Virus record (IMG/VR): IMGVR_UViG_3300018080_008436
Coordinates: 248,001 to 312,000 of that record
Direction: 5' to 3' (one strand)
DNA length: 64,000 nt
Numbering within the stretch: the first letter of the stretch is position 1; each line of letters begins with the position of its first letter. A program made the position numbers and the translations under genes. The notes beneath the pieces are model-generated. The model did not search any database. It worked only from the letters and a program-made list of their open reading frames with translations, and had not been told where the DNA came from. Shown in pieces: positions 17,483-60,861 of this stretch.

Positions 17483-18910
17483 TTAATCTTCCCACCATTG
17501 ATCAACTTGCTCTAGTCCAAGACCTTTTAATTCTTGAATAGTTTCTTCTACAGATTTACTGCCATAAATTCCGTATGTGTTCTCCATTTCTTCGCAAAAA
17601 CCCCCAACCATTTTAAAAACTTGACACAAATACTGCCTTTCACTACTTCCAGCATCATAATAAGAGTCTGCTAATTCTCCACTTTCCCTTCTAAAAGCAA
17701 AAGAGAAACAATCTTGGCTGAATTCTGGATCATATGGATCAAGCTTTGAAATACAGAAAACACATGGATCTACTTCATCCGTTTTTAATTCCTGAAGGAG
17801 TCTCGCATTTTCTTCTGCCTTCACCAATACGTTGAGATCAAAAAACATCTTCTTGACCTCTTCCAGGTTATATGTCCCACCTTTGATCGTAACGGTTCTA
17901 TCAGGCTCAATCGTGTAAAATGACTCATCCTCTTCAGGTTCATCTGGAACAACTGGCGTTTTGGCGAAAAACGAATCTGGATACATAAACTGCATCCCAA
18001 GACGCTTCGCAAAAGTCTTATCAGTTGTTTGATCTCCAACCATAATGCATTCACTCACATTCAGCTTGTATTTGTAAATATAAGGAATGGCCATCCCTGA
18101 TTGAGGCTTACGGCAATAGCAACTTACTGGCGGAACCTTATGAGGACAATAAGAGACCTCAACATCATTACAAATTGCTAAAGTTGCATTCGTAACTTCG
18201 AAACACAACTCGGCACCTTTTTCAGTCAACTCGCCTTTTGCAATACCAGATTGGTTTGATACCCCAATAAGGTAATATCCAAGCTTTTTATAGGCCCGTA
18301 AGACCTCTCCCGCCCCTTTCCTTACTTTGATCTCTGTTGGCTTTGTAGGGTACTTCCCATTGCCTCCAACAGTCTCCCTCAAAGTACCATCATAATCAAG
18401 GAAAATTGCTTTGTTTGTAAAACCCTCCCTTGGTTCCCTTCTGAACACTCTTTTCTCCACATTTTCAAAACCTTCGTCTTTCGTCGGTTTTTCAAATTCT
18501 TTCTTCATTTTGAAAAAGACAGAAATAGGGAACATGTTCGGATCTTTCTTAACTTCTTTCAGATCCTCTTTGTCATAAAACACCTTGCCATATCGTTCCA
18601 TCATCCTCTGCAAAGCATTAATCTGACAATCTTCCACAGAAGTTGACATCCAAAGACAACTGATCGGAACATCATGCTTCTTACACATCTCAATAAAAGG
18701 CTTGCGCTTATCTGCTTGCATAAAAGTGCAATCAAGAACAACAGAGTTCCCATTTTTGAGAGAAGCCTCAAGTTTCGGCAACAAATCGAGTGTTCTCCCA
18801 CCCTCTTTATCTCGGCTTAAATACGCATATGTATGCTTCTTCATGATTTCCTTTACTGCCGAGCTTTTCCCACTTGCAGGGAATCCAACCGTCATGATTG
18901 CTTTTTGCAT
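17483..18910 (-). CDS. Polynucleotide 5'-kinase / 3'-phosphatase (P-loop + HAD-IIIA) with C-terminal extension
   Basis: GFPASGKS kinase; FLDYDGTL, SNQSG, CRKP, VGD HAD motifs. Confidence 0.85.
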   Translation of the reverse strand: MQKAIMTVGFPASGKSSAVKEIMKKHTYAYLSRDKEGGRTLDLLPKLEASLKNGNSVVLDCTFMQADKRKPFIEMCKKHDVPISCLWMSTSVEDCQINALQRMMERYGKVFYDKEDLKEVKKDPNMFPISVFFKMKKEFEKPTKDEGFENVEKRVFRREPREGFTNKAIFLDYDGTLRETVGGNGKYPTKPTEIKVRKGAGEVLRAYKKLGYYLIGVSNQSGIAKGELTEKGAELCFEVTNATLAICNDVEVSYCPHKVPPVSCYCRKPQSGMAIPYIYKYKLNVSECIMVGDQTTDKTFAKRLGMQFMYPDSFFAKTPVVPDEPEEDESFYTIEPDRTVTIKGGTYNLEEVKKMFFDLNVLVKAEENARLLQELKTDEVDPCVFCISKLDPYDPEFSQDCFSFAFRRESGELADSYYDAGSSERQYLCQVFKMVGGFCEEMENTYGIYGSKSVEETIQELKGLGLEQVDQWWED

Positions 18911-19354: not shown

Positions 19355-19663
19355 TTATTCCTCGAAAACATCCAACTTATCATCGGACCCTTCAAATTGT
19401 TCCATACGAACTTGAATATATGGAGCCTTGTCAAAAGTGGAGAACGTCTTCGCAGTTGCAAGAATCATAAAAACAAACAGGAAAATGCCTGTCATGAAAT
19501 TATTGTAGTTAAGCGCAAGCATCTGACCCAACGTAAACATAAAAAGCATCATAAAGATGATGCAACAAGGGACTATGAATCCCCAGGTAAGATAAATCGC
19601 GGTATAAACTTCCATGAACTCTTGCATTTTCGGGACTCCTTTTCTTAGTTTATACCAATACAA
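19355..19663 (-). CDS. Small membrane protein
   Basis: Two hydrophobic segments. Confidence 0.55.
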   Translation of the reverse strand: MYWYKLRKGVPKMQEFMEVYTAIYLTWGFIVPCCIIFMMLFMFTLGQMLALNYNNFMTGIFLFVFMILATAKTFSTFDKAPYIQVRMEQFEGSDDKLDVFEE

Positions 19664-29224: not shown

Positions 29225-29288
29225 AAAAAACCCCGACCAGAAGTCGGGGCCAAAATACACGAAAAAAACCCCGACGAATGTCGAGGTT
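29225..29288 (-). terminator. Two tandem intrinsic terminators of the Phe attenuator
   Basis: AACCTCGAC-ATTC-GTCGGGGTT-T5 and GCCCCGAC-TTCTG-GTCGGGGT-T5. Confidence 0.85.
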
Positions 29289-29326
29289 AAAAAGATCTAA
29301 ACAACACTTTGATCTAACTACCTCGA

Positions 29327-29371
29327 CTAGAGGTGGCTAAAAAATCGAAAGATGTTGTTTAAGTTGTTCAT
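29327..29371 (-). CDS. Leader peptide MNNLNNIFRFFSHL (Phe attenuator)
   Basis: AAGGA RBS, TTT CGA TTT TTT, stop inside 1:2 hairpin. Confidence 0.8.
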   Translation of the reverse strand: MNNLNNIFRFFSHL

Positions 29372-29396
29372 AATGTAAAATCCTTTTGTTGCCCCT

Positions 29397-29427
29397 ATTA
29401 TAGGGTATCATCCATGCTTTTCAAGTC
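29397..29427 (-). promoter_or_regulatory. Sigma70-type promoter GACTTGAAA-N16-TATAAT
   Basis: Same motif at four non-coding RNA loci. Confidence 0.8.
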
Positions 29428-33811: not shown

Positions 33812-33926
33812 GCCAGTGTATTGCTCATTTATACTACCTCACAAAGTTTAGAATGCTGAATAGAACCTTATTCAAGTTCACTTTTAATAGTACTGTATGG
33901 GTGGGATTCGAACCCACATCTCTGGC
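33812..33926 (-). ncRNA. Permuted tRNA-like RNA carrying CAGCA module
   Basis: GCCAG/CTGGC ends, T-arm first (GTGGG TTCGAAT CCCAC), GAACTT-GAATA-AGGTTC-TATT-CAGCA. Confidence 0.5.
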
Positions 33927-34010: not shown

Positions 34011-34138
34011 ATGAGTCGGAAGGAATCGAACCTTCATTCCCTGGTTGATTTATTAAACATCAAATAGTTGCTGGAACGAAACTTATACAGTTTCACTTGG
34101 TTTTATGTCCAGGAGTTCTACCATTAAACTACGACCCA
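34011..34138 (-). ncRNA. tRNA-like RNA whose anticodon loop is replaced by a ~65-nt insert with CAGCAA module
   Basis: Intact acceptor, D and T arms, CCTGG/CCAGG stem, no encoded CCA. Confidence 0.7.
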
Positions 34139-34508: not shown

Positions 34509-34626
34509 TCAGGACGGCTGGATTCGAACCAACTCCTTTAGCTCCTCAAGCTAAAATAAATATTGCTGTAGCGAACCTTATTGTCAAGTTCATGTTTATA
34601 ACGTGCTACCATTACACTACGTCCTG
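34509..34626 (-). ncRNA. tRNA-like RNA with ~47-nt CAGCAA module between D-arm and anticodon arm
   Basis: CAGGACG/CGTCCTG acceptor, TTAGC-TTGAGGA-GCTAA hairpin, T-arm; no encoded CCA. Confidence 0.7.
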
Positions 34627-34865: not shown

Positions 34866-34931
34866 AAAAAAGCCCTCCTAACGCAAGCTAAGAGGGCACA
34901 AAAAAAGCCCTCCCGCTCATGGCAGAAGGGC
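34866..34931 (-). terminator. Two tandem intrinsic terminators of the Glu/Pro attenuator
   Basis: GCCCTTCTGC-CATGA-GCGGGAGGGC-T7 and GCCCTCTTAGC-TTGC-GTTAGGAGGGC-T6. Confidence 0.88.
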
Positions 34932-34953
34932 CAAAATCATAGTTATGATCTAA

Positions 34954-35031
34954 CTACAGATCGGCTGACCTCCTGCCAAAGGCTGGCGGTTCTTCTCGTT
35001 CTGGTTCTCGAATGTACATGTAGTTGTTCAT
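34954..35031 (-). CDS. Leader peptide MNNYMYIREPEREEPPAFGRRSADL (Glu/Pro attenuator)
   Basis: AAAGGA RBS; 4 GAA + 3 CCR within 8 codons. Confidence 0.8.
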   Translation of the reverse strand: MNNYMYIREPEREEPPAFGRRSADL

Positions 35032-35056
35032 AACAAATTTTCCTTTCGTTACCCCC

Positions 35057-35087
35057 ATTATAAACCATCCTAGAGACTTTTCAAGTC
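35057..35087 (-). promoter_or_regulatory. Promoter GACTTGAAA-N16-TATAAT
   Basis: Shared motif. Confidence 0.8.
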
Positions 35088-52675: not shown

Positions 52676-53158
52676 ATGGATTTATATTTTTTACAAGACC
52701 AAGGAGACGCTTTGGTTTATAATGACGGAATTGCATATGAGTTTGTTGAGCAAACAGTTCAAGTCCCAAATGCAAGTGGAGCGCAAGTTATTGAAGGAAA
52801 CATCTCTTCATTTAATTTCAGCATTGCTGACGCACAATTAAAAACAGCTTACACTGCTGGTGAACATGCTTTGGCTTTTTATGTTGATGAAAATAAAATT
52901 GAAGTTGACATGCCCCTTGCCAACACTTGGTATACTTTCCCCGATGTTCCAGTTGCAGGAGTTATTCGGGTTTGGCAAACGGGAGCATTTTACCCAAACA
53001 TAAAAATTAATGGTATTGATCAGGCCGTTAACGCAGGAACAAGCAAAGCTAGTGCAATGCCATACAATGTTGCTGTTGGAGATGTAATCGAAATACGAGA
53101 ACCAACTACTAGTGGAAACACTGGGTACGGATATATATTGCCATTTGTTTATCCATAA
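52676..53158 (+). CDS. Hypothetical beta-rich protein
   Basis: AGGAGG RBS. Confidence 0.65.
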   Translation: MDLYFLQDQGDALVYNDGIAYEFVEQTVQVPNASGAQVIEGNISSFNFSIADAQLKTAYTAGEHALAFYVDENKIEVDMPLANTWYTFPDVPVAGVIRVWQTGAFYPNIKINGIDQAVNAGTSKASAMPYNVAVGDVIEIREPTTSGNTGYGYILPFVYP

Positions 53159-53159
53159 A

Positions 53160-53179
53160 TTGGGCGCAAGGATTGAATT
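53160..53179. repeat. Duplicate of tRNA-His 3' end (att-like)
   Basis: TTGGGCGCAAGGAttGAATT vs 53711..53730, 18/20 match. Confidence 0.6.
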
Positions 53180-53217
53180 AAAAAAGGGTGGACTAAGTCC
53201 ACCCTTTAACATTTACT

Positions 53218-53547
53218 TCATTCAGTTAGTACAGGGATCTTCTTCGGTTTGCCCCTACTAGACTTCGGCAAACTAATTTTAAGAACTCCATTGTCTAAAG
53301 CACTTTTTATCTTACTTACCGCAACATCATTTGGAAGTCTGAAGGATAAATCTTTTTTGCCATAAGCTCTCTTCCTATATCCACCTTCTTTATCTCGTTC
53401 CCAAGAAATGTCCAAATAATTGTCCTTTGCATAAACCTCTACTTTGTCCTTCTCGACACCTGGCATATCAACTCTTACTTCATAGCTTTCATCATTTGTC
53501 CAAGTGTCATACTCAACGTCTCTGTTAAAAAAGAAATCAGAATACAT
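53218..53547 (-). CDS. Small heat-shock protein (Hsp20/alpha-crystallin)
   Basis: VDMPGVEKDKV..FRLP..LDNGVLKISLPK. Confidence 0.9.
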   Translation of the reverse strand: MYSDFFFNRDVEYDTWTNDESYEVRVDMPGVEKDKVEVYAKDNYLDISWERDKEGGYRKRAYGKKDLSFRLPNDVAVSKIKSALDNGVLKISLPKSSRGKPKKIPVLTE

Positions 53548-53592
53548 AACTTGTTCCTCCTTTAGTTAGTTTGTTATGCAATTTTACTAAAA

Positions 53593-53609
53593 AGCAAAAC
53601 ACATGCCAA
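53593..53609 (-). promoter_or_regulatory. Sigma54 -24/-12 promoter of hsp20
   Basis: TTGGCATGTGTTTTGCT (GG-N10-GC). Confidence 0.65.
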
Positions 53610-53677
53610 CTCTATTTAAGCAGGAATCTAGGTAAGAAAAGGGACAGTTTGACACATATAAGTGAGACAAATGGGCG

Positions 53678-53706
53678 CAAAAAAGCGCCATCCTAAAATG
53701 GCGCTT
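53678..53706 (-). terminator. Terminator ending tRNA operon 3
   Basis: AAGCGCCAT-TTTAGG-ATGGCGCTT-T4. Confidence 0.75.
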
Positions 53707-53711
53707 GAGTT

Positions 53712-53803
53712 TGGGCGCAAGGACGGAATTCGAATCCGTAGGGGAGATTACCTCCAACAGGGTCACAACCTGTCACGCTAAGCCAATTACGTTCTACCTT
53801 GCG
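53712..53803 (-). tRNA. tRNA-His(GTG) with long variable arm
   Basis: Loop TTGTGAC, GGAG-GTAAT-CTCC arm, C73, no encoded G-1. Confidence 0.8.
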
Positions 53804-53804
53804 A

Positions 53805-53880
53805 TGGGCTACTCGACGGATCTTGAAACCGCAACCTCCAGGGCCACAACCTAGCGCTCTGCCTTTGAGCTACGAGTAGC
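53805..53880 (-). tRNA. tRNA-His(GTG)
   Basis: G-1:C73, loop TTGTGGC. Confidence 0.88.
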
Positions 53881-53891
53881 ATCAAATTGGT

Positions 53892-54563
53892 CTATCCCAA
53901 CCATTTGTCTCTTTTAAATCCACCTATTTCTTGAATGCCTCCCATAATTTTTTGTTTTATTTCAACGCTGTGTAATCTTACTGTGCAAATTCCGTATTTT
54001 AGTTTACCCTGAAATTCGCTAGATTTAAAATAACATTTTCTCAAATTTTCTTTCGTCAAACTAAGTGCATTAAGCCAAAATTCAACAATCTCTTGTTCAG
54101 AAACTCCATTGTTTGTATAGGCATTTATAGAAAGAGCAAATCTTTTTTCTTCAAACTCAAAGTGTTCTCTAAGGAACTTCATAAAAAGAATCATCATGTC
54201 AATATCGCTATTGCAGAATGTCACTCCTTTATTGGATTCTTTTGTTCCTTCTGCCCAATAAAGAATACAGCCAACCCGAAAACTTTCAGATATTTTAGCA
54301 AGTGCTCTTCCATCAGTTTGCCACTTCCTTCTTTTTCTTCTGAATTTTTCCGAATATTTCTCCTGTTTACCAAAATAACCACCTTTTCTTGTTTTTGTCC
54401 TGTGCCGCAATTTTAGGTTTTCTATTTGTTCTTTCGTTAGTTGAATATCTCGAACCCATAAACTAACAGACGATTGAGACACATCTAGAATCTTGGCTAT
54501 TTTCTTTATAGATTGTCCACTTTTTCTTAGTTCTCTTGCTTTGTTTCTTTCGACTTTTTTCAT
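53892..54563 (-). mobile_element. HTH + single-motif LAGLIDADG-like endonuclease inside tRNA operon
   Basis: SIKKIAKILDVSQSSVSLW HTH; ILYWAEGTK..FCNSD; start trimmed to MKKVE. Confidence 0.6.
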
Positions 54564-54621
54564 TTTCGAACCCCCATAGTTATATGTGATATAACATATT
54601 ATACAGCAAGTTCGAACTTTT

Positions 54622-54696
54622 TGGTAGCAGTATCGGGACTTGAACCCGAACGGCACTCCTTATGAAAGAGTCGCACTACCATTATGCTATACTGCT
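54622..54696 (-). tRNA. tRNA-Met or Ile2 (CAT)
   Basis: Loop TTCATAA, CCA. Confidence 0.85.
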
Positions 54697-54750
54697 ATGA
54701 AAGTCTTGGGCTAACCATTGCCCAACCTAGCGTCATTTATCGTATCCAAT

Positions 54751-54825
54751 TGGCGGTGATAAGGGGAATCGAACCCCTGTCCTCTGGGCGACAACCAGAA
54801 ATCCTAGCCATTAAACGATATCACC
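54751..54825 (-). tRNA. tRNA-Asp(GTC)
   Basis: Loop TTGTCGC, G73, CCA. Confidence 0.9.
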
Positions 54826-54831
54826 GATAAG

Positions 54832-54905
54832 CGGAACCGAAGGGACTCGAACCCTCAATCTCCTGATCGACAGTCAGGGGCACTAACCAATTGCGCTACG
54901 GCTCC
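54832..54905 (-). tRNA. tRNA-Asp(GTC), CCA not encoded
   Basis: Loop CTGTCGA. Confidence 0.88.
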
Positions 54906-55023
54906 ATAAAACTGAAAGCTCTAAAGTTTTCGTTAGTCTTTTTGCTTTCGCTCATACTCCTATACTCTTTATTGTCCAATCCAGTTGTCAATTGGCTCTA
55001 AGGAACGATACGAACTTTCAGTT

Positions 55024-55100
55024 TGGTGACGACAGTTGGACTTGAACCAACGCTCTCCAGTGTGTCGAACTGGCGATTTATCCATCTAATCTATGCCGTC
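55024..55100 (-). tRNA. tRNA-Val(GAC), C33
   Basis: Loop TCGACAC, CCA. Confidence 0.8.
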
Positions 55101-55104
55101 AATT

Positions 55105-55182
55105 TGGTTCTGCGAGAGGGACTTGAACCCCCGACCTCCTCCTTATCAGGGAGGCGCTACTTACCATCTGAGCTACCGCAGA
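55105..55182 (-). tRNA. tRNA-Ile(GAT)
   Basis: Loop CTGATAA, CCA. Confidence 0.9.
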
Positions 55183-55187
55183 ATCAT

Positions 55188-55278
55188 TGGTGGGAGTAGC
55201 AGGACTTGAACCTGCGTTTACCTTTCGGCCTCCTGTGTATCAGACAGGCGCTCTAACCAAATACTGAGCTATACTCCC
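55188..55278 (-). tRNA. tRNA-Ile(GAT) with long variable arm
   Basis: Loop CTGATAC; GCC-GAAA-GGT arm; CCA. Confidence 0.85.
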
Positions 55279-55338
55279 ATAACATTCTTTTTGCATTGTA
55301 ACATCATCAATGTTATCGTGCAAATTTGATGTTACAAT

Positions 55339-55413
55339 TGGCAGGGACGAAAGGATTTGAACCCTTACCGCATGGTTTTGGAGACCAGCAGGCTACCATT
55401 ACAACACGCCCCT
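55339..55413 (-). tRNA. tRNA-Trp(CCA)
   Basis: Loop CTCCAAA, G73. Confidence 0.9.
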
Positions 55414-55418
55414 GTTAG

Positions 55419-55494
55419 TGGTACTCCTACCAGAACTCGAACCTGGATCTTCGACTTCGAAGGCCGTTATTCTAATCCATTGAACTATAGGAGC
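55419..55494 (-). tRNA. tRNA-Arg(TCG)
   Basis: Loop CTTCGAA. Confidence 0.88.
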
Positions 55495-55528
55495 ATCTAC
55501 ATATAAATTTTCAAAGAACTCTAATTCT

Positions 55529-55605
55529 TGGTACACCCAGCAGGATTTGAACCTGCAACCTCCTGGTTCGTAGCCAGACGCTCTATCCAATTGAGCTATG
55601 AGTGC
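55529..55605 (-). tRNA. tRNA-Arg(ACG)
   Basis: Loop CTACGAA. Confidence 0.93.
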
Positions 55606-55610
55606 AACTT

Positions 55611-55687
55611 TGGTACTCCTGGCGGGACTCGAACCCACATAGACCTGTTTAGAAGACAGGTGCCTGATCCAGTTAGACTACAGGAGC
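55611..55687 (-). tRNA. tRNA-Arg(TCT)
   Basis: Loop CTTCTAA. Confidence 0.92.
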
Positions 55688-55854
55688 ATCTAAAATTATT
55701 TCAACTTTTCTTTCGCTTTTTTCAAATCCTCAATTAACTGTTTCTTTGAGTAGTTTCTGCCTACCCAAACTAATTCATACATTTTCTCGTCTTTTTGATT
55801 CTGAACACTGTTCAGAACTCGTTCTAAAATCTCTTGTGCTGTTTCTTTCATTTT

Positions 55855-55929
55855 TGGCCTCTCCTATAGGACTCGAACCTATATCTGCGGTTTAGGAAAC
55901 CGATATTCTATCCCTTGAACTAAGGAGAG
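55855..55929 (-). tRNA. tRNA-Arg(CCT)
   Basis: Loop TTCCTAA. Confidence 0.9.
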
Positions 55930-55937
55930 TCAGGCAC

Positions 55938-55970
55938 AAAAAAAGCCCAAGCTCCTTAGAGCCTGGGCTT
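55938..55970 (-). terminator. Attenuator terminator of tRNA operon 3
   Basis: AAGCCCAGGCTC-TAAG-GAGCTTGGGCTT-T5. Confidence 0.88.
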
Positions 55971-55988
55971 CGTAAATCTGCTTATCTA

Positions 55989-56069
55989 TCAGAACATGCG
56001 ATAGCGCAGATCAGAAGCCCTGTGGCTCCAATCGCGTCTAATAATATGCATGTCTCTAACAACGTTCAT
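55989..56069 (-). CDS. Leader peptide MNVVRDMHIIRRDWSHRASDLRYRMF (multivalent attenuator)
   Basis: TAAGGA RBS; codons match the downstream tRNA set. Confidence 0.8.
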   Translation of the reverse strand: MNVVRDMHIIRRDWSHRASDLRYRMF

Positions 56070-56166
56070 TTTTCTTAAATCCTTATTCGATTTAGTTTTT
56101 CAACTTACCCTCATTAGTCACATTTGATTTGAGTTTTTCTCAGATCTGTACCAAGAAGTTATTATC

Positions 56167-56197
56167 ATTATAAGCCTTATTCAGAGTATTTCAAGTC
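56167..56197 (-). promoter_or_regulatory. Promoter GACTTGAAA-N16-TATAAT
   Basis: Shared motif. Confidence 0.8.
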
Positions 56198-56220
56198 GTC
56201 TTTGAAGATTTTCTTGAATT

Positions 56221-56727
56221 TTATCTGAGGGTATCGTACAAGTCCTCATACCTAGCTCTCCACCAGTAAGCTTTAGGTACATTGCCAATGCAGAAATAAT
56301 CCCCTGCATCCTTGGCCTTTAAATAAAAATTATGTGCTTCCTCATATAAGCCAAAGATCCTGGCAGAACGAATAATCCTGGTAATTCTAAGTAAGTTATG
56401 GTTGAACTCTTTACACCAAACCCTTTGTTTATCTTTGTCATCAACATCCAGGCCATAGAAATCGAGCATACGTTCAACAGCATTGGTCATATTCTCTGTG
56501 ATTTCTGGGATATCTCTGCATTCTTCCACTATCATTGGGTTAATAACTGGATATGTCATTGCCCAATTAGATGTTTCGTGCAAAGGGAAGATCCATTGAA
56601 CCTGATCATGACACTTTTCCATTTCTTCATCACTACAATAAAGAATGTCCTCATAAATCCTTCCTTTGTAATCAGCGTGATTGCCTGACAAGAATTTTAC
56701 AATCCAATCTTTATCTGTAATGATCAT
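56221..56727 (-). CDS. Opioid growth factor receptor (OGFr_N)-like domain protein
   Basis: HDQVQWIFPL..MLDFYG..NHNLLRITRIIRS. Confidence 0.8.
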   Translation of the reverse strand: MIITDKDWIVKFLSGNHADYKGRIYEDILYCSDEEMEKCHDQVQWIFPLHETSNWAMTYPVINPMIVEECRDIPEITENMTNAVERMLDFYGLDVDDKDKQRVWCKEFNHNLLRITRIIRSARIFGLYEEAHNFYLKAKDAGDYFCIGNVPKAYWWRARYEDLYDTLR

Positions 56728-56768
56728 TTTAGTCACATTTGATCCAGGTTTTTCCTAGATCTGTACTG

Positions 56769-57515
56769 TTAGAAAAGACCCAAGGCTCTCCCCTGATCCC
56801 TGAAAGCAATTTCGATAACAAGTGAGAACCCTTCTGGAACCAAATATTGCTTGATTACTTGTTTCTCACATTCTTCGCTCATATCCTGTTCTATTCCCAT
56901 TTGACCTTCAAGAACTTTTACAGCCACATTGAATGCTTCATATTCAAATTCCACAATATCAACTTCTCCTTCAAGATCTCGAAGAAGCGCCTGACCTTCA
57001 TTCAAACCAATCATCTCATAGAAATAGATCATAGCTTTATAAAGTTCATGTAATTTATCTGACTCACGCATCTGATCGTGAATCTCAAATGATATATTGT
57101 CCAAAGCCTCTCTACATTCTACAAGTTTCTTGAAGTCTTCGTCTTCAAAAGCATCGTTAAGATTTCCACTTGCCATGATCTCTGCGATCTTATCTCCAGA
57201 AACATATTCGTCGTCGTCAGGAATAGCTCGATACAAATCTTGTAGAAGTTTGATGTTTTCCATTTTTTCTCCACTATTTTCATCAATAACAAGCTCAATT
57301 CTGAATTCGCGCTCTTTATTGTCGATAAAGTGAGATACATTTTCGATCAACCAAGTTAAAACTTCTTCTGCGGCTTTATCAGCATCTACATTTTTACTTA
57401 GTTCATGGATTTCTTGAAGGGTCTTTTTCTCGAATGTCATTTTGACTTCTTCAAATTCGAATTTACCTTCAGCAAGGTTTTGGAATGCTTCAATAATTTT
57501 CTCTTCATCACTCAT
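56769..57515 (-). CDS. Hypothetical acidic protein
   Basis: Start trimmed to MSDEE after AGGAG. Confidence 0.6.
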   Translation of the reverse strand: MSDEEKIIEAFQNLAEGKFEFEEVKMTFEKKTLQEIHELSKNVDADKAAEEVLTWLIENVSHFIDNKEREFRIELVIDENSGEKMENIKLLQDLYRAIPDDDEYVSGDKIAEIMASGNLNDAFEDEDFKKLVECREALDNISFEIHDQMRESDKLHELYKAMIYFYEMIGLNEGQALLRDLEGEVDIVEFEYEAFNVAVKVLEGQMGIEQDMSEECEKQVIKQYLVPEGFSLVIEIAFRDQGRALGLF

Positions 57516-57516
57516 T

Positions 57517-57975
57517 TTATTTCTCCTTAGTAAACCATCTACATTGGTGTAATTTTTCACTACATTTGGGACATTGGATTCCTTTTTGGATAGCTTCTTG
57601 GAAATTTAGCATACTGGAACCAGTAGTTGGGCATTTTTTTGGAAGTCCAGCCTTTTTGATTGCTTCATCTAAAGAATCTAAATCGTCTAAGAACACATCA
57701 TATTGCCATAGACATTCTGCACCAATACTCCAGAGATTTACTCTATAGCATTTGGTTTTGATTCCTTCCTTGTTCGGGAAAGTAATTAGGGCGTATTCTC
57801 TGCCAGTGTTTTTGAGTTCCTGGATTTGTTGTTTTAGCTCAGGAAGTTCTTTAATACGTTCAGAGTTAATAATATCATCAATATCCCCCATAGGCCAGGG
57901 GGCAGTAATAGTGAAACCAGTCCCACAGTATTCGCAGTCGTCGTTTCTACAGGTAAAATCGCATCCAGCAGGCAT
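57517..57975 (-). CDS. Hypothetical Cys-rich protein
   Basis: Multiple CxxC. Confidence 0.6.
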   Translation of the reverse strand: MPAGCDFTCRNDDCEYCGTGFTITAPWPMGDIDDIINSERIKELPELKQQIQELKNTGREYALITFPNKEGIKTKCYRVNLWSIGAECLWQYDVFLDDLDSLDEAIKKAGLPKKCPTTGSSMLNFQEAIQKGIQCPKCSEKLHQCRWFTKEK

Positions 57976-58008
57976 AATATAACCTCTTTTGTTTTTAGAG
58001 ATTATACA

Positions 58009-58916: not shown

Positions 58917-60350
58917 TTAGACGGTGACCCCTTCTGGGACTACGATTTCATACTTCTCGATTGCTCGATCAAGTACTGCCATTGGCGAGAAATCAGTGCC
59001 TCCGAGAACTGCGCCTAAGATTGAAGGACTGAAGCCACTTACAAGAGCAACATTCTCATGCGTACCTCTTGCAGGACTTCCTGCATATCCAGCAGTATTC
59101 CAATATACAATCTTTGGACGACTGTATCCATTTGCTTCCCACTCTTCCATGCATCTTTCAATAGTGGTCTTATCGCAGTTACTAGCGCCAGAGCACCAGC
59201 CTCCACCATTATCGAACTGCATGTCTGAAATGATCAACAGACAGTTTGGAATCTGTTCATCAGTTACGTTGAACATCTTTGCAGAGTTCAGGATCTGATC
59301 AAGAGCCGCCTTGACGTTCGTTGATCCACAATATCCTTCTCTTCTGCAACGCTGAATTCCCTGAACAAAAGTCTTTCCCTTCCAATCGACAAGGTGACTG
59401 TCGTTTGAGAATGGAATGAACTTCCTGTAGAAAGGGTTATCCTTTCCAACCCTGTCAGAGCAGTACAATCCCAAACTGGTTGAGATATCAATAGCTCTGA
59501 TAGAACCAGAGACAGTAACTCCCATAGATCCAGAGAAGTCACAAATTGGCATGATTCTCATGTTGCAGTCTTCCATGAAGTTTGGAAGAGCTTCAAACTG
59601 AGCATTTGCCAACTTACCATCCTTGTTAGCAGTACGAAGAACGTCATGTGGGAACAAAGCACTTGCGTTAACCTTGTTGTCAGAGTCCTCGTCAGTCAAA
59701 GACTCTCTCCACTGATCGTATCTTGCAGGATCATGCTTCAAGAATGCGTTAGCAGATCTTGCCATTGCGACAGAAGGAACAGTGTTGTAGTCAATGTCAT
59801 GCCAGTCGCCTGAGCACATTGCAGTCTCTACAACATTAGTGTACTCAGCCAAGTGCTTTCTGAATACCTTTGGAGACATTCCGAGAGCCTTTCTAAGCTT
59901 TGCGAAAACAACCTTGTTCTTCTTCTCTCTTGGTGCCCACTTGCAAGCAAGACCATGCTTATCAGCAATAGCTCTTGCCCAGTACTGGATTGCAGTATCT
60001 TCGCAAGGAGTATCGATACATGCAGTCAAGTCATCCCAACGTCCAGTCTCTGGAATAAGATGAATATTGACAGTAATCCACTCAGGATGCTTCTCAGCCA
60101 TCCACTTCAATACAGAACGGAATCCGCTTCTGTTACCTGCTCCACCTCTAGCATCACGAAGCCAGAAAGCAAGCTTTGCGGCACGAAGTTGATCGGACTT
60201 GAACGCAGGCTTAAACAAGTTCAGAGCACCTGCCTCCGAACCGTAGTAGCTACCACGCTTCTCGAAAAGTGATCCTGCCTTGGAGAAGAACTCCAAAAGT
60301 GCGTTTCCAGTTGAGTCATACAGAAAGTCGTTGTTGTGTCCTCTTGCCAT
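58917..60350 (-). CDS. TROVE-like DUF2828 + vWA protein
   Basis: WLRDARGGAG, GRWDDL, KWAPRE, VPSVAM, CDFSGSM MIDAS, ISDMQFD, VYWN, VSGFSP. Confidence 0.8.
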   Translation of the reverse strand: MARGHNNDFLYDSTGNALLEFFSKAGSLFEKRGSYYGSEAGALNLFKPAFKSDQLRAAKLAFWLRDARGGAGNRSGFRSVLKWMAEKHPEWITVNIHLIPETGRWDDLTACIDTPCEDTAIQYWARAIADKHGLACKWAPREKKNKVVFAKLRKALGMSPKVFRKHLAEYTNVVETAMCSGDWHDIDYNTVPSVAMARSANAFLKHDPARYDQWRESLTDEDSDNKVNASALFPHDVLRTANKDGKLANAQFEALPNFMEDCNMRIMPICDFSGSMGVTVSGSIRAIDISTSLGLYCSDRVGKDNPFYRKFIPFSNDSHLVDWKGKTFVQGIQRCRREGYCGSTNVKAALDQILNSAKMFNVTDEQIPNCLLIISDMQFDNGGGWCSGASNCDKTTIERCMEEWEANGYSRPKIVYWNTAGYAGSPARGTHENVALVSGFSPSILGAVLGGTDFSPMAVLDRAIEKYEIVVPEGVTV

Positions 60351-60381
60351 CGTACCATCCTCCTATTGTTGGTTTTGTGTC

Positions 60382-60447
60382 AAAAAAAAGACCAGTCAAA
60401 CTTGGTTCCGAGTCCCATCTCGCGTATGGAACAAAGTCTAACTGGTC
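60382..60447 (-). terminator. Long hairpin + T8 between RNA array and TROVE-like gene
   Basis: GACCAGTTAGACTT..AAGTTTGACTGGTC-T8. Confidence 0.75.
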
Positions 60448-60460
60448 AAAGTTAAAAATC

Positions 60461-60818
60461 GGAACAGGTTAGCAATTTTGGTTTTCATTTCAAGTGAAAG
60501 TTTTGGTTGCTGTAACTAACCTTCTATCCTAAATTAAAAATTTGAACAGACTGACTTGTTTTTTTTAGCATAAAAAATTTTGAGTTGCTGAATGCAGTCT
60601 TATATCAAATTGTTTTTCTAAATTTTCCTTTTTCTTGTTTTCAAAGAAACAAGTGAAACAGCTTGGGTTTTCCATCCTTTATTTCAGACCTCGATGAATT
60701 TGGGTCCTCAAATTTATTTTTAAAACCCTCTCGACTGGGTTCTCGTTTTATTTCTGTCAGGGCGACTCTGACGCTCGTTTTATCGTGTTTTTTGGTTGCA
60801 GTAACCAAGCTTTATTCA
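60461..60818 (-). ncRNA. Array of three structured RNA units with helix-(C/T)AGCAA-type motif
   Basis: Units 60461..60529, 60540..60610, 60654..60818 with covarying stems; third has ACTGCAA. Confidence 0.7.
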
Positions 60819-60830
60819 GTTGTTGGTTCC

Positions 60831-60861
60831 ATTATAAGGATTACGAAAAACTTTTCAAGTC
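60831..60861 (-). promoter_or_regulatory. Promoter GACTTGAAA-N16-TATAAT
   Basis: Shared motif. Confidence 0.8.

What the first reader, a model, noticed from the sequence alone, without database searches (positions are those of the whole stretch)
55855..56197. Seven-amino-acid multivalent attenuator with codon-level match to a 13-tRNA operon
Seen: codons 3-17 are GTT GTT AGA GAC ATG CAT ATT ATT AGA CGC GAT TGG AGC CAC AGG. Fourteen of these 15 are readable by anticodons in the operon (GAC, TCT, GTC, CAT, GTG, GAT, ACG, CCA, CCT); only AGC is not. Every amino acid in the operon is represented. Hairpin 1:2 is GGAGCC-ACAG-GGCTTC. The antiterminator is GGGCTTC..GAAGCCC, extended by ATCTGC/GCAGAT. 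The terminator is AAGCCCAGGCTC-TAAG-GAGCTTGGGCTT-T5. Known multivalent leaders (ilvL, thrL) sense 2-3 amino acids, so seven would be exceptional. Uncertain: the earliest codons may lie too far from segment 1 to switch it.
Basis: partly seen in the sequence, partly recalled or inferred. Interest (0 to 1): 0.9.

Follow-up and report, generated by a model that had tools for sequence, protein, structure and literature searches.

The report
Leader-peptide attenuators gating phage tRNA operons
A giant phage puts a tiny "test" gene, written in exactly the codons read by the tRNAs that follow it, plus a switchable terminator in front of each of its tRNA gene clusters. This probably lets it make its own tRNAs only when decoding of those codons falters, a form of tRNA control I could not find described.

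Summary
On the minus strand a near-consensus promoter (56194-56167) and Shine-Dalgarno site precede a 26-codon ORF (56069-55989). A strong terminator (55971-55938) sits 8 nt before tRNA-Arg(CCU), the first of 12 tRNAs plus one sub-threshold tRNA-His-like gene.

Codons 3-17 are as reported, and 14 of 15 are read by the operon's anticodons. No other of 62,576 stop-free 15-codon windows in the 64 kb reaches 14.

It is not a one-off. Two other tRNA clusters in the window (Glu/Pro, Phe) and four more elsewhere in the same megaphage genome (at least 476 kb) have the same layout: Cys/Tyr/Leu/Ser, Gln/Asn, Val/Ala/Ile, Thr/Lys. The true leader-to-operon pairing is the single best of 5040 permutations.

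Twelve diverged homologues of this leader keep the codon core in frame. They also keep three mutually exclusive structures: a long protector hairpin, an antiterminator and the terminator.

In a ribosome-mask model of all units, a stall inside the cognate run leaves the antiterminator free. One to three codons past the run it is blocked.

Best reading: classical ribosome-mediated attenuation, re-targeted to tRNA genes as a feedback on decoding capacity. Which of the seven amino acids are actually sensed is unproven. Rfam and the literature library showed no precedent.

The parts
56167..56194 (-). Sigma-70-type promoter, TTGAAA-16 nt-TATAAT.
   Evidence: It is the best promoter match (11 of 12) in 53000-58000. 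All leader units in this phage and its relatives carry a similar TTGAAA(AG)...TATAAT-like promoter.
56070..56160 (-). 5' UTR of about 90 nt. It holds AAGGA (56084-56080), 10 nt before the ATG, and a roughly 35-nt copy (56150-56114) of the sequence just upstream of the OGFr_N gene start (56760-56729).
   Evidence: Read directly from the sequence. The 15-mer occurs exactly twice in the window. A purine-rich Shine-Dalgarno-like site is present in all 12 homologues.
55989..56069 (-). Leader ORF of 26 codons plus a TGA stop.
   Evidence: The ATG is invariant in 12 homologues. A 3-nt indel (I versus II) keeps the frame. A 1-nt indel after the codon core shifts the downstream frame in L006 and L025, so the peptide tail is not conserved but the RNA is.
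56019..56063 (-). Run of cognate codons 3-17: V V R D M H I I R R D W S H R.
   Evidence: 14 of 15 are decodable by the operon's anticodons. This is the unique such window among 62,576. The core D-M-H-I(I)-R-R-W-D-R-S is conserved in relatives.
55986..56062 (-). Long protector (anti-antiterminator) hairpin P1. Bottom helix: codons 3-8 pair with the 3' end of the ORF. Middle helix: AGACGC with GCGCU.
   Evidence: Folding energy is -29.8 kcal/mol for the whole hairpin and -15.4 for the top part. It is predicted in every homologue and is the RNAalifold consensus of the full-length alignment.
55965..56020 (-). Antiterminator. Segment 2 (GGGCUUCUGAUCUGC, 56020-56006) pairs with segment 3 (GCAGAU..GAAGCCC, 55981-55965) around a small CUAUCG/UGAUAG hairpin. 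It can extend by UUGGAGCC with GGCUCUAA.
   Evidence: Folding energy is -23.5 kcal/mol, or -36.0 when extended. It is the MFE of the transcript cut before the terminator's 3' arm. It is the RNAalifold consensus of the truncated alignment, with 3 pairs keeping pairing through double changes. Compensatory examples are AUCUGC/GCAGAU against ACCUGC/GCAGGU in L025, and GGUCUG/CAGACC against GAUCUG/CAGAUC in L012 versus L021.
55938..55971 (-). Intrinsic terminator: 13-bp stem, UAAG loop, U7.
   Evidence: Folding energy -23.0 kcal/mol. The stem covaries in homologues, for example UA:6 AU:3 at one pair.
55855..55929 (-). tRNA-Arg(CCU), the first gene of the regulated operon. It starts 8 nt after the T-run.
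53718..55687 (-). Rest of the operon: tRNA-Arg UCU, ACG and UCG; Trp; Ile GAU x2; Val GAC; Asp x2; Met/CAU; His GUG; and a His-like sub-threshold tRNA (53801-53718). An inserted 224/254-aa HTH protein ORF lies at 54656-53892. A conserved 51-aa ORF (55851-55696) sits between the first and second tRNA.
   Evidence: No promoter or terminator of comparable quality lies inside the cluster.
34872..35084 (-). Second unit in the window. Promoter at 35084-35057. Leader ORF at 35031-34954 (MNNYMYIREPEREEPPAFGRRSADL*). Tandem terminators at 34931-34907 and 34897-34872. Then the Glu/Pro tRNA cluster at 34856-33685.
   Evidence: It holds the only 8-codon window with at least 7 E/P among 84,589. GGCAGGAGG pairs with CCUUCUGCC of terminator 1. 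The homologue at L007:14571 keeps this pairing with an A-U to U-A swap.
29230..29424 (-). Third unit in the window. Promoter at 29424-29397. Leader ORF at 29371-29327 (MNNLNNIFRFFSHL*). Tandem terminators at 29287-29268 and 29250-29230. Then two tRNA-Phe genes at 29221-29066.
   Evidence: GUCGAGG just after the stop is the exact complement of CCUCGAC in the 5' arm of terminator 1. GUCGGGG of terminator 1's 3' arm is the exact complement of CCCCGAC in terminator 2's 5' arm.

Best explanation
This is a ribosome-mediated (leader-peptide) transcription attenuator that gates a phage tRNA operon. It is one member of a genome-wide set of at least seven such units in a megaphage.

Proposed mechanism:
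1. Host-type RNA polymerase starts at the TTGAAA/TATAAT promoter, and a ribosome loads on the 26-codon leader.
2. If every codon is decoded promptly, the ribosome runs on to the region of segment 2 and the stop codon, which lies in the antiterminator loop. This keeps segments 2 and 3 apart. The 13-bp terminator forms and transcription ends 8 nt before the first tRNA.
3. If aminoacyl-tRNA for any of the leader's codons is scarce, the ribosome stalls on the 5' arm of the long protector hairpin. Segment 2 stays free and pairs with segment 3, the 5' arm of the terminator. The polymerase then reads into the tRNA genes.
4. Because the leader is written in the codons read by the tRNAs encoded downstream, the product relieves the stall. 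This makes a negative feedback on decoding capacity with 'any one scarce is enough' logic.

Likely physiological triggers are loss of host tRNAs during infection (turnover or cleavage by host defences) or codon-usage mismatch. Amino-acid starvation would also trigger it.

Shown here: the anatomy, its repetition in seven units, the leader-to-operon amino-acid match, conservation, and the structural alternatives.

Inferred: translation of the leader, the direction of the switch, which codons are effective, and the physiological signal.
For: Anatomy at the locus: promoter, Shine-Dalgarno site, ATG, codon run, protector hairpin, antiterminator and terminator, then the tRNA 8 nt later.

Repetition:
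- Phe and Glu/Pro units lie in the window.
- On the same contig outside the window: Cys/Tyr/Leu/Ser (L046), Gln/Asn (L087), Val/Ala/Ile (L143) and Thr/Lys (L151).
- A relative has its own Gln/Asn unit (L025).

Leader-to-operon match:
- The true pairing of 7 leaders with 7 clusters is the single best of 5040 permutations.
- Each leader's best cluster is its own.
- The six-frame scans are unique for the seven-amino-acid and Glu/Pro units.

Isoacceptor level:
- Ile is ATT and Val is GTT in the unit carrying Ile(GAU) and Val(GAC).
- Ile is ATA and Val is mostly GTA in the unit carrying Ile(UAU) and Val(UAC).
- The summed codon-level statistic gives P = 0.017 against synonymous resampling.

Conservation:
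- 12 distinct homologues (OGFr_N neighbour 66-77% identical) keep the ATG, the Shine-Dalgarno-like site and the core DMHI(I)RRWDRS in frame.
- The downstream frame is not kept.

Val covariation:
- Leaders without a Val codon (L012, L020, L026, L025) have no tRNA-Val.
- Three of four leaders with a Val codon do have one. This includes Val(UAC) in L018, found by Rfam.

Structure:
- All homologues give a protector hairpin of -22 to -31, an antiterminator of -21 to -28 and a terminator of -18 to -24 kcal/mol.
- The consensus of the truncated alignment is the antiterminator. The consensus of the full alignment is protector plus terminator.

Geometry:
- In 8 units, the probability that the terminator's 5' arm is held by upstream sequence is 0.7-0.98 while the A site is inside the cognate run.
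- It collapses within -2 to +3 codons of the run's end.

Context: tRNA-repair-type genes lie nearby. A polynucleotide-kinase-like ORF is in the window. RNA ligases and RtcB are in the relatives' loci.
Against: - There is no experimental or transcriptomic evidence, and the host is unknown.
- At equilibrium the full-length RNA always prefers the terminator (0.92-0.98 at every ribosome position). The switch therefore has to be kinetic, as in trp, and was not simulated.
- Without a ribosome, the truncated transcript prefers the antiterminator in most units: 0.8-0.98, with 0.40 and 0.59 in the Val/Ala/Ile and Thr/Lys units. The Phe unit is the exception at 0.01. Default termination therefore depends on the protector hairpin forming first.
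- In this leader, W14, H16 and R17 lie where a stalled ribosome would block the antiterminator.
- Part of the codon conservation (GAU AUG CAU) could be imposed by the bottom helix of the protector hairpin rather than by sensing.
- Covariation in the antiterminator is modest: 3 of 13 pairs, with many invariant.
- The isoacceptor 'roll call' is incomplete. The Glu/Pro leader covers 2 of 4 anticodons and Arg(UCG) is not covered here.
- L006 has a Val codon but no detectable tRNA-Val.
Confidence: 0.8

Rival explanations
1. Same attenuator hardware, but only the few codons next to segment 1 are effective sensors: roughly codons 9-13, which are I, I, R, R, D (W in relatives). The early V/R/D/M/H codons and the late W/H/R codons are kept by RNA-structure constraints or drift. 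On this view it is a 3-4 amino-acid sensor rather than a 7 amino-acid one.
For: - A stall at codons 3-8 leaves the 1:2 top hairpin (-15.4 kcal/mol) able to form.
- Codons 14-17 fall in the non-permissive zone of the mask model.
- GAUAUGCAU pairs with the ORF's 3' end in every homologue.
- Positions 2-5 of the peptide vary among homologues.
Against: - In the other six units the whole run lies in the permissive zone and matches the operon over 8-14 codons.
- The variable positions 2-5 are still enriched for operon amino acids, and the presence of Val there tracks the presence of a tRNA-Val.
- With the bottom helix held open, the equilibrium favours the antiterminator (0.92).
Confidence: 0.35
2. 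A general translation-capacity or timing device. Any slowing of ribosomes (host shut-off, ribosome shortage) lets RNA polymerase outrun the ribosome and changes termination. On this view codon identity is secondary.
For: - The no-ribosome state is predicted to favour the antiterminator at the truncated stage in most units.
- All units share one promoter type, which suggests co-regulation.
Against: Seven leaders with seven different, operon-specific codon compositions cannot be explained by a generic sensor. The pairing is unique among 5040 permutations, and the runs in two units are unique in the six-frame scans.
Confidence: 0.1
3. The short transcript or the peptide is the functional product, either as a trans-acting small RNA released by termination or as a micropeptide. 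On this view the position in front of tRNAs is secondary.
For: - Attenuator-derived sRNAs and leader peptides with trans functions are described for rnTrpL/peTrpL (abstracts listed).
- The leader RNA is highly structured (z = -4.8).
Against: - The C-terminal frame of the peptide is not conserved.
- Seven unrelated peptide sequences share only the property of matching their operon.
- Weak Rfam sRNA hits are far below threshold (Spot_42 25.8 versus 80 bits).
- A trans role would not exclude attenuation.
Confidence: 0.05
4. An ordinary terminator that insulates the upstream OGFr_N gene from the tRNAs, with a chance short ORF in the spacer.
For: A terminator after a protein gene and before tRNAs is commonplace. 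The Phe run alone (3 F in 4 codons) is not rare: 153 of 103,088 windows.
Against: - A dedicated strong promoter lies between the upstream gene and the ORF.
- The codon match is unique in the window.
- The layout is repeated in seven units, and the ORF start and core are conserved.
Confidence: 0.02

Closest known systems
ilvGMEDA (ilvL) multivalent attenuator of enterobacteria (from my own knowledge)
   Same: - A leader ORF carries codons for several amino acids spread over about 15 codons.
- Those codons lie on the 5' arm of a long protector stem.
- There is an antiterminator/terminator choice.
- Shortage of any of the sensed amino acids raises read-through.
   Different: - ilvL senses three amino acids (Leu, Val, Ile) and controls biosynthetic enzymes.
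- Here up to seven amino acids (ten anticodons) are written into the leader.
- The regulated genes are the tRNAs that decode the leader itself.
- There is no sequence or Rfam-family similarity.
trp, his, thr, leu and pheA leader-peptide attenuators (from my own knowledge; Rfam leader families)
   Same: - Promoter-proximal short ORF with a Shine-Dalgarno site.
- A run of regulatory codons immediately 5' of segment 2.
- Mutually exclusive 1:2, 2:3 and 3:4 hairpins.
- A U-tract terminator, more stable than the antiterminator as in trp.
   Different: - The target genes are tRNAs, not amino-acid pathways.
- It is a phage element.
- Two units use tandem terminators, in which the first terminator's 3' arm can pair with the second terminator's 5' arm.
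- No Rfam leader family matches at E <= 1.
pheST (pheM leader) attenuator (from my own knowledge)
   Same: A leader-peptide attenuator that controls a component of the decoding machinery (Phe-tRNA synthetase) in response to decoding of its own amino acid's codons.
   Different: It regulates a protein (a synthetase) for one amino acid. Here the RNA adaptor itself is regulated, for many amino acids and isoacceptors.
T-box riboswitches
   Same: A cis-acting leader with a terminator/antiterminator choice that reports on the state of a specific tRNA and controls translation-related genes.
   Different: - A T-box binds uncharged tRNA directly through a specifier codon and the T-box sequence, without a ribosome.
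- Here there is a translatable ORF with a Shine-Dalgarno site and ATG.
- No T-box match was found.
tRNA arrays of large phages (T4, T5, jumbo and huge phages; from my own knowledge)
   Same: Clusters of phage tRNA genes, thought to sustain translation when host tRNAs are depleted or cleaved, often lying near tRNA-repair genes.
   Different: I know of no report that such arrays are gated by leader-peptide attenuators, and six full-text searches found none. The distant huge phage LR756511.1 shows no such leader at the one tRNA examined.

Membership tests
Ribosome-mediated (leader-peptide) transcription attenuator | Short ORF with a ribosome-binding site close behind a promoter and ahead of the regulated genes. 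| tested here: met
   Promoter at 56194-56167, AAGGA 10 nt before the ATG, and a 26-codon ORF. The ATG and Shine-Dalgarno-like site are conserved in 12 homologues.
Ribosome-mediated (leader-peptide) transcription attenuator | A run of codons for the sensed amino acid(s) within the leader. | tested here: met
   14 of 15 codons belong to the operon's seven amino acids, unique among 62,576 windows. The same holds in six other units.
Ribosome-mediated (leader-peptide) transcription attenuator | Intrinsic terminator between the leader and the regulated genes. | tested here: met
   13-bp GC-rich stem plus U7 at 55971-55938. The stem covaries in homologues.
Ribosome-mediated (leader-peptide) transcription attenuator | An antiterminator that shares a strand with the terminator, and a protector (1:2) hairpin that shares a strand with the antiterminator and includes the regulatory codons. 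| tested here: met
   This is predicted in all 12 homologues. Consensus folds are, with a few compensatory changes. It rests on thermodynamic prediction only.
Ribosome-mediated (leader-peptide) transcription attenuator | The position of the codon run is such that a stalled ribosome frees segment 2 while a ribosome at the end of the ORF blocks it. | tested here: met
   Ribosome-mask model on 8 units. For this leader, codons 14-17 fall outside the permissive zone.
Ribosome-mediated (leader-peptide) transcription attenuator | Read-through responds to the supply of the cognate aminoacyl-tRNA. | not testable with these tools
   This needs reporter or in vitro transcription-translation assays.
Amino-acid biosynthetic operon attenuators (trp/his/ilv class in the narrow sense) | The regulated genes encode biosynthesis, transport or charging enzymes for the sensed amino acid. 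| tested here: not met
   The downstream genes are tRNAs plus two small or inserted ORFs. This is the point of departure from the known class.
Rfam leader families (His, Thr, Trp, Leu, Phe leaders and others) | A match to a curated covariance model. | tested here: not met
   No leader family appears at the gathering threshold or at E <= 1 over 29000-56300.
T-box riboswitch | Stem I with a specifier loop and the conserved T-box antiterminator sequence. | tested here: not met
   No T-box match. The leader is a translatable ORF instead.

The most novel reading that the evidence does not exclude
A megaphage runs its whole tRNA complement (at least 48 genes) as a set of at least seven demand-driven operons.
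- Each operon is gated by a leader ORF written in the codons, down to synonymous codon choice, of the isoacceptors it controls.
- The phage thereby detects which host tRNAs have become limiting, for example through anticodon-nuclease defences or host shut-off, and replaces just those.
- Some units use a two-terminator 'domino' to sharpen the switch.

This would be the first described case of tRNA genes regulated by ribosome-mediated attenuation. It would also be a natural library of orthogonal, codon-specific decoding sensors.
Probability: 0.55. Interest if true: 0.92.

Novelty: new variant of a known kind. Interest (0 to 1): 0.88.

Why it matters
Bacterial tRNA genes are thought to be controlled mainly at promoters, through growth rate and the stringent response (from my own knowledge). 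How phages regulate their own tRNAs is little understood.

A leader-peptide attenuator in front of tRNA genes closes a direct loop. The sensed quantity, decoding of given codons, is restored by the regulated product.

If it works as inferred, it bears on three things:
- It explains how very large phages can carry dozens of tRNAs without paying for them constantly.
- It links phage tRNA arrays mechanistically to host tRNA-depleting defences.
- It extends multivalent attenuation from 2-3 amino acids to 4-7 amino acids and up to ten anticodons per leader.

It also yields compact, modular, codon-specific sensors of about 200 nt that could report on the availability of individual isoacceptors in vivo. 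The prediction can be tested directly with simple reporter constructs.

Tried and rejected
- blastn of the locus against cultured and deposited phages found only tRNA-to-tRNA matches and no relative.
- Protein-pattern search in IMG/VR with the OGFr_N neighbour returned only the source phage's two contigs.
- The first leader pattern in IMG/VR also returned only the source phage.
- A 17-mer from the Glu/Pro leader gave only chance hits in high-GC contigs.
- The core pattern of this leader has no match in IMG/VR or in the 185,579 species genomes. This gives no host clue and no cellular counterpart.
- tblastn of the RecD-like helicase gave only distant hits of about 30% identity.
- The huge phage LR756511.1, which has a 30%-identical OGFr_N homologue, has no leader before its tRNA-Lys.
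- Walking along the contig with an ORF from L046 failed because the exact product is not on record. tRNA-Gly, the one amino acid not yet assigned to a unit, was therefore not located.
- Equilibrium folding of the full-length leader with a ribosome mask does not discriminate, because the terminator always wins. I switched to the transcript cut before the terminator's 3' arm, with no pairs allowed across the ribosome.
- Relaxed ARAGORN settings on the odd tRNA-like genes gave inconsistent calls.
- The 'every isoacceptor is called' idea was tested by synonymous resampling. It is only weakly supported unit by unit: Cys/Tyr/Leu/Ser P = 0.10, the Arg triple P = 0.22, the Val/Ala/Ile unit 0.02, and summed 0.017. 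I therefore present it as suggestive.
- The Val presence/absence covariation (7 of 8 consistent) gives about P = 0.07 by my own hand Fisher calculation, which ignores relatedness. It is not decisive.
The permutation result does not depend on them.
Full report
**What is at the locus.** Everything relevant lies on the minus strand.
- Downstream of a 171-aa OGFr_N-domain gene (56736-56221; Pfam PF04664) lies the best sigma-70-type promoter of the neighbourhood. It is TTGAAA-16-TATAAT at 56194-56167.
- A 5' UTR of about 90 nt follows, then AAGGA 10 nt before an ATG.
- The ORF has 26 codons (56069-55989) and encodes MNVVRDMHIIRRDWSHRASDLRYRMF.
- Next come a 13-bp GC-rich hairpin and seven T (55971-55938).
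- Eight nucleotides later tRNA-Arg(CCU) begins (55929-55855).
- ARAGORN and Rfam agree on 12 tRNAs from 55929 to 53805: Arg CCU, UCU, ACG and UCG; Trp; Ile GAU x2; Val GAC; Asp x2; CAU; His.
- A 13th, His(GUG)-like gene with a long variable arm at 53801-53718 falls just under Rfam's threshold: 28.4 against 29 bits.
Fourteen of the 15 codons are decodable by anticodons of the operon.

**More than chance.**
- In the six-frame translation of the 64 kb there are 62,576 stop-free 15-codon windows. Only this one has at least 14 codons for V/R/D/M/H/I/W, whose background frequency is 0.29.
- The leader RNA folds much better than shuffles (z = -4.8).

**The decisive point is repetition.** The other two tRNA clusters of the window have the same layout.
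- Ahead of the Glu/Pro cluster (34856-33685) sit a TTGAAA-16-TATAAT promoter, a Shine-Dalgarno site, a leader MNNYMYIREPEREEPPAFGRRSADL and two terminators. Its EPEREEPP stretch is the only 8-codon window of 84,589 with at least 7 Glu/Pro.
- Ahead of the two tRNA-Phe genes (29221-29066) sit the same promoter type, a leader MNNLNNIFRFFSHL and two terminators.

**Four more units on the same contig.** The window is part of IMG/VR contig 3300018080_008436 (476 kb). An identical protein is on a 524,692-bp contig. Scanning IMG/VR for the shared promoter pattern recovered four more units:

| Locus | Leader peptide | tRNAs downstream |
|---|---|---|
| L046, about 7 kb beyond the window end | MKSLSLSLCSSYLSL... 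| Cys x2, Tyr x2, Leu UAA/GAG/CAA/UAG, Ser GCU/CGA/UGA/GGA |
| L087 | MSVQVQQNNQNNQ... | Gln, Asn x2 |
| L143 | MKKRVEIAIAVVAVAVVA... | Val(UAC) x2, Ala UGC/GGC, Ile(UAU) |
| L151 | MYATTKTTKTTKTTKK... | Thr GGU/CGU/UGU, Lys UUU/CUU |

- The seven units cover 19 amino acids; Gly was not located.
- Scoring every leader against every cluster, the true pairing is the unique maximum of all 5040 permutations.
- Each leader's best-matching cluster is its own.

**Is the match at codon level?**
- The clearest sign comes from Ile and Val, which occur in two units.
  - The unit with Ile(GAU) and Val(GAC) uses ATT and GTT.
  - The unit with Ile(UAU) and Val(UAC) uses ATA and mostly GTA.
- The Cys/Tyr/Leu/Ser and Thr/Lys leaders contain a cognate codon for every one of their 10 and 5 anticodons.
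- The Arg codons of this leader family are AGA, CGN and AGG, matching Arg UCU, ACG and CCU.
- Resampling synonymous codons with the phage's own usage gives only modest significance: 0.10, 0.22 and 0.02 for single units, and 0.017 summed.
- The Glu/Pro leader covers only 2 of 4 anticodons.
- I therefore regard amino-acid-level matching as established and isoacceptor-level matching as suggestive.

**Relatives.**
- The OGFr_N neighbour has homologues at 66-77% identity on metagenomic contigs with the same synteny.
- One metagenome scan with the leader core found more.
- Twelve distinct leader sequences result.
- The ATG, a purine-rich Shine-Dalgarno site and the core D-M-H-I(I)-R-R-W-D-R-S are kept in frame. 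One indel is exactly 3 nt.
- After the core, a 1-nt indel in L006 and L025 changes the frame and moves the stop, while the nucleotides stay alignable. That pattern is expected if the 5' half is read as codons and the 3' half acts as RNA.
- Leaders lacking a Val codon (L012, L020, L026, L025) have clusters lacking tRNA-Val.
- Of four leaders with a Val codon and a readable cluster, three have a tRNA-Val: the window (GAC), L016 (AAC) and L018 (UAC). The L018 gene was found by Rfam and its anticodon was read from the fold.
- L006 is the exception.
- A relative also has its own Gln/Asn unit (L025) and another its own Glu/Pro unit (L007).

**Structures.** Folding energies for the window leader:

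| Structure | Energy (kcal/mol) |
|---|---|
| Whole three-tier protector hairpin P1 (codons 3-16 on its 5' arm) | -29.8 |
| Antiterminator, segment 2 with segment 3 | -23.5 |
| Antiterminator with its extension | -36.0 |
| Terminator | -23.0 |

- The transcript cut before the terminator's 3' arm folds into the antiterminator. The full transcript folds into P1 plus the terminator.
- All 12 homologues show the same three states.
- RNAalifold returns the antiterminator for the truncated alignment and P1 plus terminator for the full one.
- Compensatory changes exist but are few, because most positions are constrained several times over. Examples are AUCUGC/GCAGAU against ACCUGC/GCAGGU, GGUCUG/CAGACC against GAUCUG/CAGAUC, and three pair types at the pair flanking GGGC/GCCC.
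- No T-box or known leader family matches.

**Where must the ribosome stall?**
- I modelled a ribosome with an empty A site as masking 12 nt downstream and forbidding pairs across it. I then asked whether the terminator's 5' arm is held by upstream sequence at the moment the 3' arm has not yet been made.
- In all eight units examined this probability is high (0.7-0.98) while the A site is within the cognate run. It collapses within -2 to +3 codons of the run's end.
- The positions at which the probability first falls below half its plateau are, against the run's end:
  - Phe: run ends at codon 11, drop at 13.
  - Glu/Pro: 16 and 17.
  - Cys/Tyr/Leu/Ser: 15 and 15.
  - Gln/Asn: 13 and 13 in L087, 12 and 13 in L025.
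  - Val/Ala/Ile: 18 and 18.
  - Thr/Lys: 16 and 16.
- For the leader in question the permissive zone ends at codon 13: 0.92 up to codon 10; 0.77, 0.56 and 0.54 for codons 11-13; 0.16 at W14; about 0 afterwards.
- In relatives W sits at codon 12.
- A ribosome at the stop codon sits in the antiterminator loop and keeps segments 2 and 3 apart.
- This is the geometry of classical attenuation.

**How early codons could count (inference).** Codons 3-8 form the 5' strand of the bottom helix of P1. Holding that helix open frees the CUAUCG/UGAUAG hairpin, which nucleates the antiterminator.

**Tandem terminators.**
- In the Phe unit, GUCGAGG pairs with CCUCGAC (antiterminator against terminator 1). GUCGGGG of terminator 1's 3' arm is exactly complementary to CCCCGAC of terminator 2's 5' arm.
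- The Glu/Pro unit has the analogous arrangement.
- One antitermination decision could therefore propagate to the second terminator. In the off state two terminators act in series.
- This is inferred from complementarity only.

**Limits.**
- There is no expression data, and the host is unknown.
- The switch must be kinetic. At equilibrium the terminator always wins in the full-length RNA, as it does in trp.
- In most units the antiterminator is favoured in the truncated RNA even without a ribosome.
- Which of the seven amino acids are really sensed is open.

**Novelty.**
- Six full-text searches of about 8.4 million papers and preprints found nothing on leader-peptide attenuators in front of tRNA genes. 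That library does not include most subscription journals.
- No cellular genome in the species collection carries the leader core.
- A distant huge phage lacks it at the site checked.
- To my knowledge, multivalent leaders sense two or three amino acids and control biosynthetic or charging enzymes.
- I therefore class this as a new variant of a known mechanism: ribosome-mediated attenuation applied to tRNA operons, as a genome-wide, operon-specific feedback on decoding capacity in a megaphage.

**Verdict.**
- Observation: confirmed.
- Interpretation: supported, with the caveat about which codons are effective.
- Confidence that these are functional leader-peptide attenuators of tRNA operons: 0.8.
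- Interest: 0.88.

Noticed in passing
window 34011-34138 (-) and 34509-34626 (-); related sequence near 33850-33900 (-): Two tRNA-like genes in the Glu/Pro cluster match the whole tRNA model, but the anticodon loop is replaced by an insert of 64 and 58 nt. The two inserts resemble each other and a third intergenic copy. They could be small introns or a miniature element that targets anticodon loops. Their anticodons could not be read.
   Followed up: partly
window 29371-29327 and 35031-34954 (-): The only Arg codons inside the Phe run (F R F F) and the Glu/Pro run (E P E R E E P P) are CGA, three out of three, although CGA is 11% of Arg codons in this phage. The cognate tRNA-Arg(UCG) sits in the seven-amino-acid operon and is the one anticodon that operon's own leader does not call. 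This may be cross-wiring between operons or a deliberately slow codon. The relative L007 has Gln codons at these positions.
   Followed up: partly
window 29287-29230 and 34931-34872 (-): In the tandem terminators, the 3' arm of the first terminator is complementary to the 5' arm of the second (exactly so in the Phe unit). A single antitermination event could therefore disable both terminators in a 'domino'.
   Followed up: partly
window 53718-53801 (-): A tRNA-His(GUG)-like gene with a long variable arm and an unusual acceptor stem scores just below Rfam's threshold. Relatives also carry a second, 85-90-nt 'His' tRNA.
   Followed up: partly
window 53892-54656 (-); L026:4583-5495: A 224/254-aa ORF with an N-terminal resolvase-type HTH domain is inserted between tRNA-CAU and tRNA-His. 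In relative L026 a different ORF interrupts the cluster between Arg and Ile. These may be mobile or homing-type insertions inside tRNA arrays.
   Followed up: partly
window 55696-55851 (-): A 51-aa ORF with no Pfam match lies between the first and second tRNA of the operon. A 51-aa ORF is called at the same place in L016, and L028 has an ORF start there too. Function unknown.
   Followed up: partly
window 56114-56150 and 56729-56760 (-): A repeat of about 35 nt (AGATCT..GAAAAAC..ATCAAATGTGACTAA) occurs just upstream of the OGFr_N gene start and again inside the leader's 5' UTR. The 15-mer core occurs only at these two places in the window. It may be a local duplication or a second, phage-specific promoter or operator.
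   Followed up: partly
window about 60350-60858 (-): A consensus promoter (TTGAAA-16-TATAAT at 60858) is followed by about 480 nt without an obvious ORF before the DUF2828/DUF7788 gene (60350-58917). This stretch contains a repeated GGTTAC(T/A)GCAACCAAAA motif. It could be a structured 5' UTR or a small RNA.
   Followed up: no
window 17483-18910 (-); L009/L010/L011, L014/L015, L016: Genes of the tRNA/RNA-repair type accompany the tRNA region in this clade. There is a polynucleotide-kinase-like ORF in the window, and T4-type RNA ligase 1, an RNA_ligase-family protein and RtcB in the relatives' loci. This fits a theme of coping with tRNA damage.
   Followed up: no
L026:6447-6522 (+): A tRNA-like gene appears to have an 8-nt anticodon loop around GAA. 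ARAGORN calls it Phe with a 3-nt 'intron'. It could be a frameshift-suppressor-like tRNA or a degenerate copy.
   Followed up: no
L129 (LR756511.1) 19472-19545 (+): A 595-kb uncultured phage with a distant OGFr_N homologue carries a tRNA with anticodon CUA (an amber suppressor) about 450 nt upstream of that gene. This hints at stop-codon reassignment in that phage.
   Followed up: no
leaders in the window, L007, L020, L026 and L028: Many leaders begin Met-Asn-Asn (ATG AAC AAC) or Met-Lys-Lys/Asn, whatever operon they gate. This may be an A-rich start context for efficient initiation.
   Followed up: no
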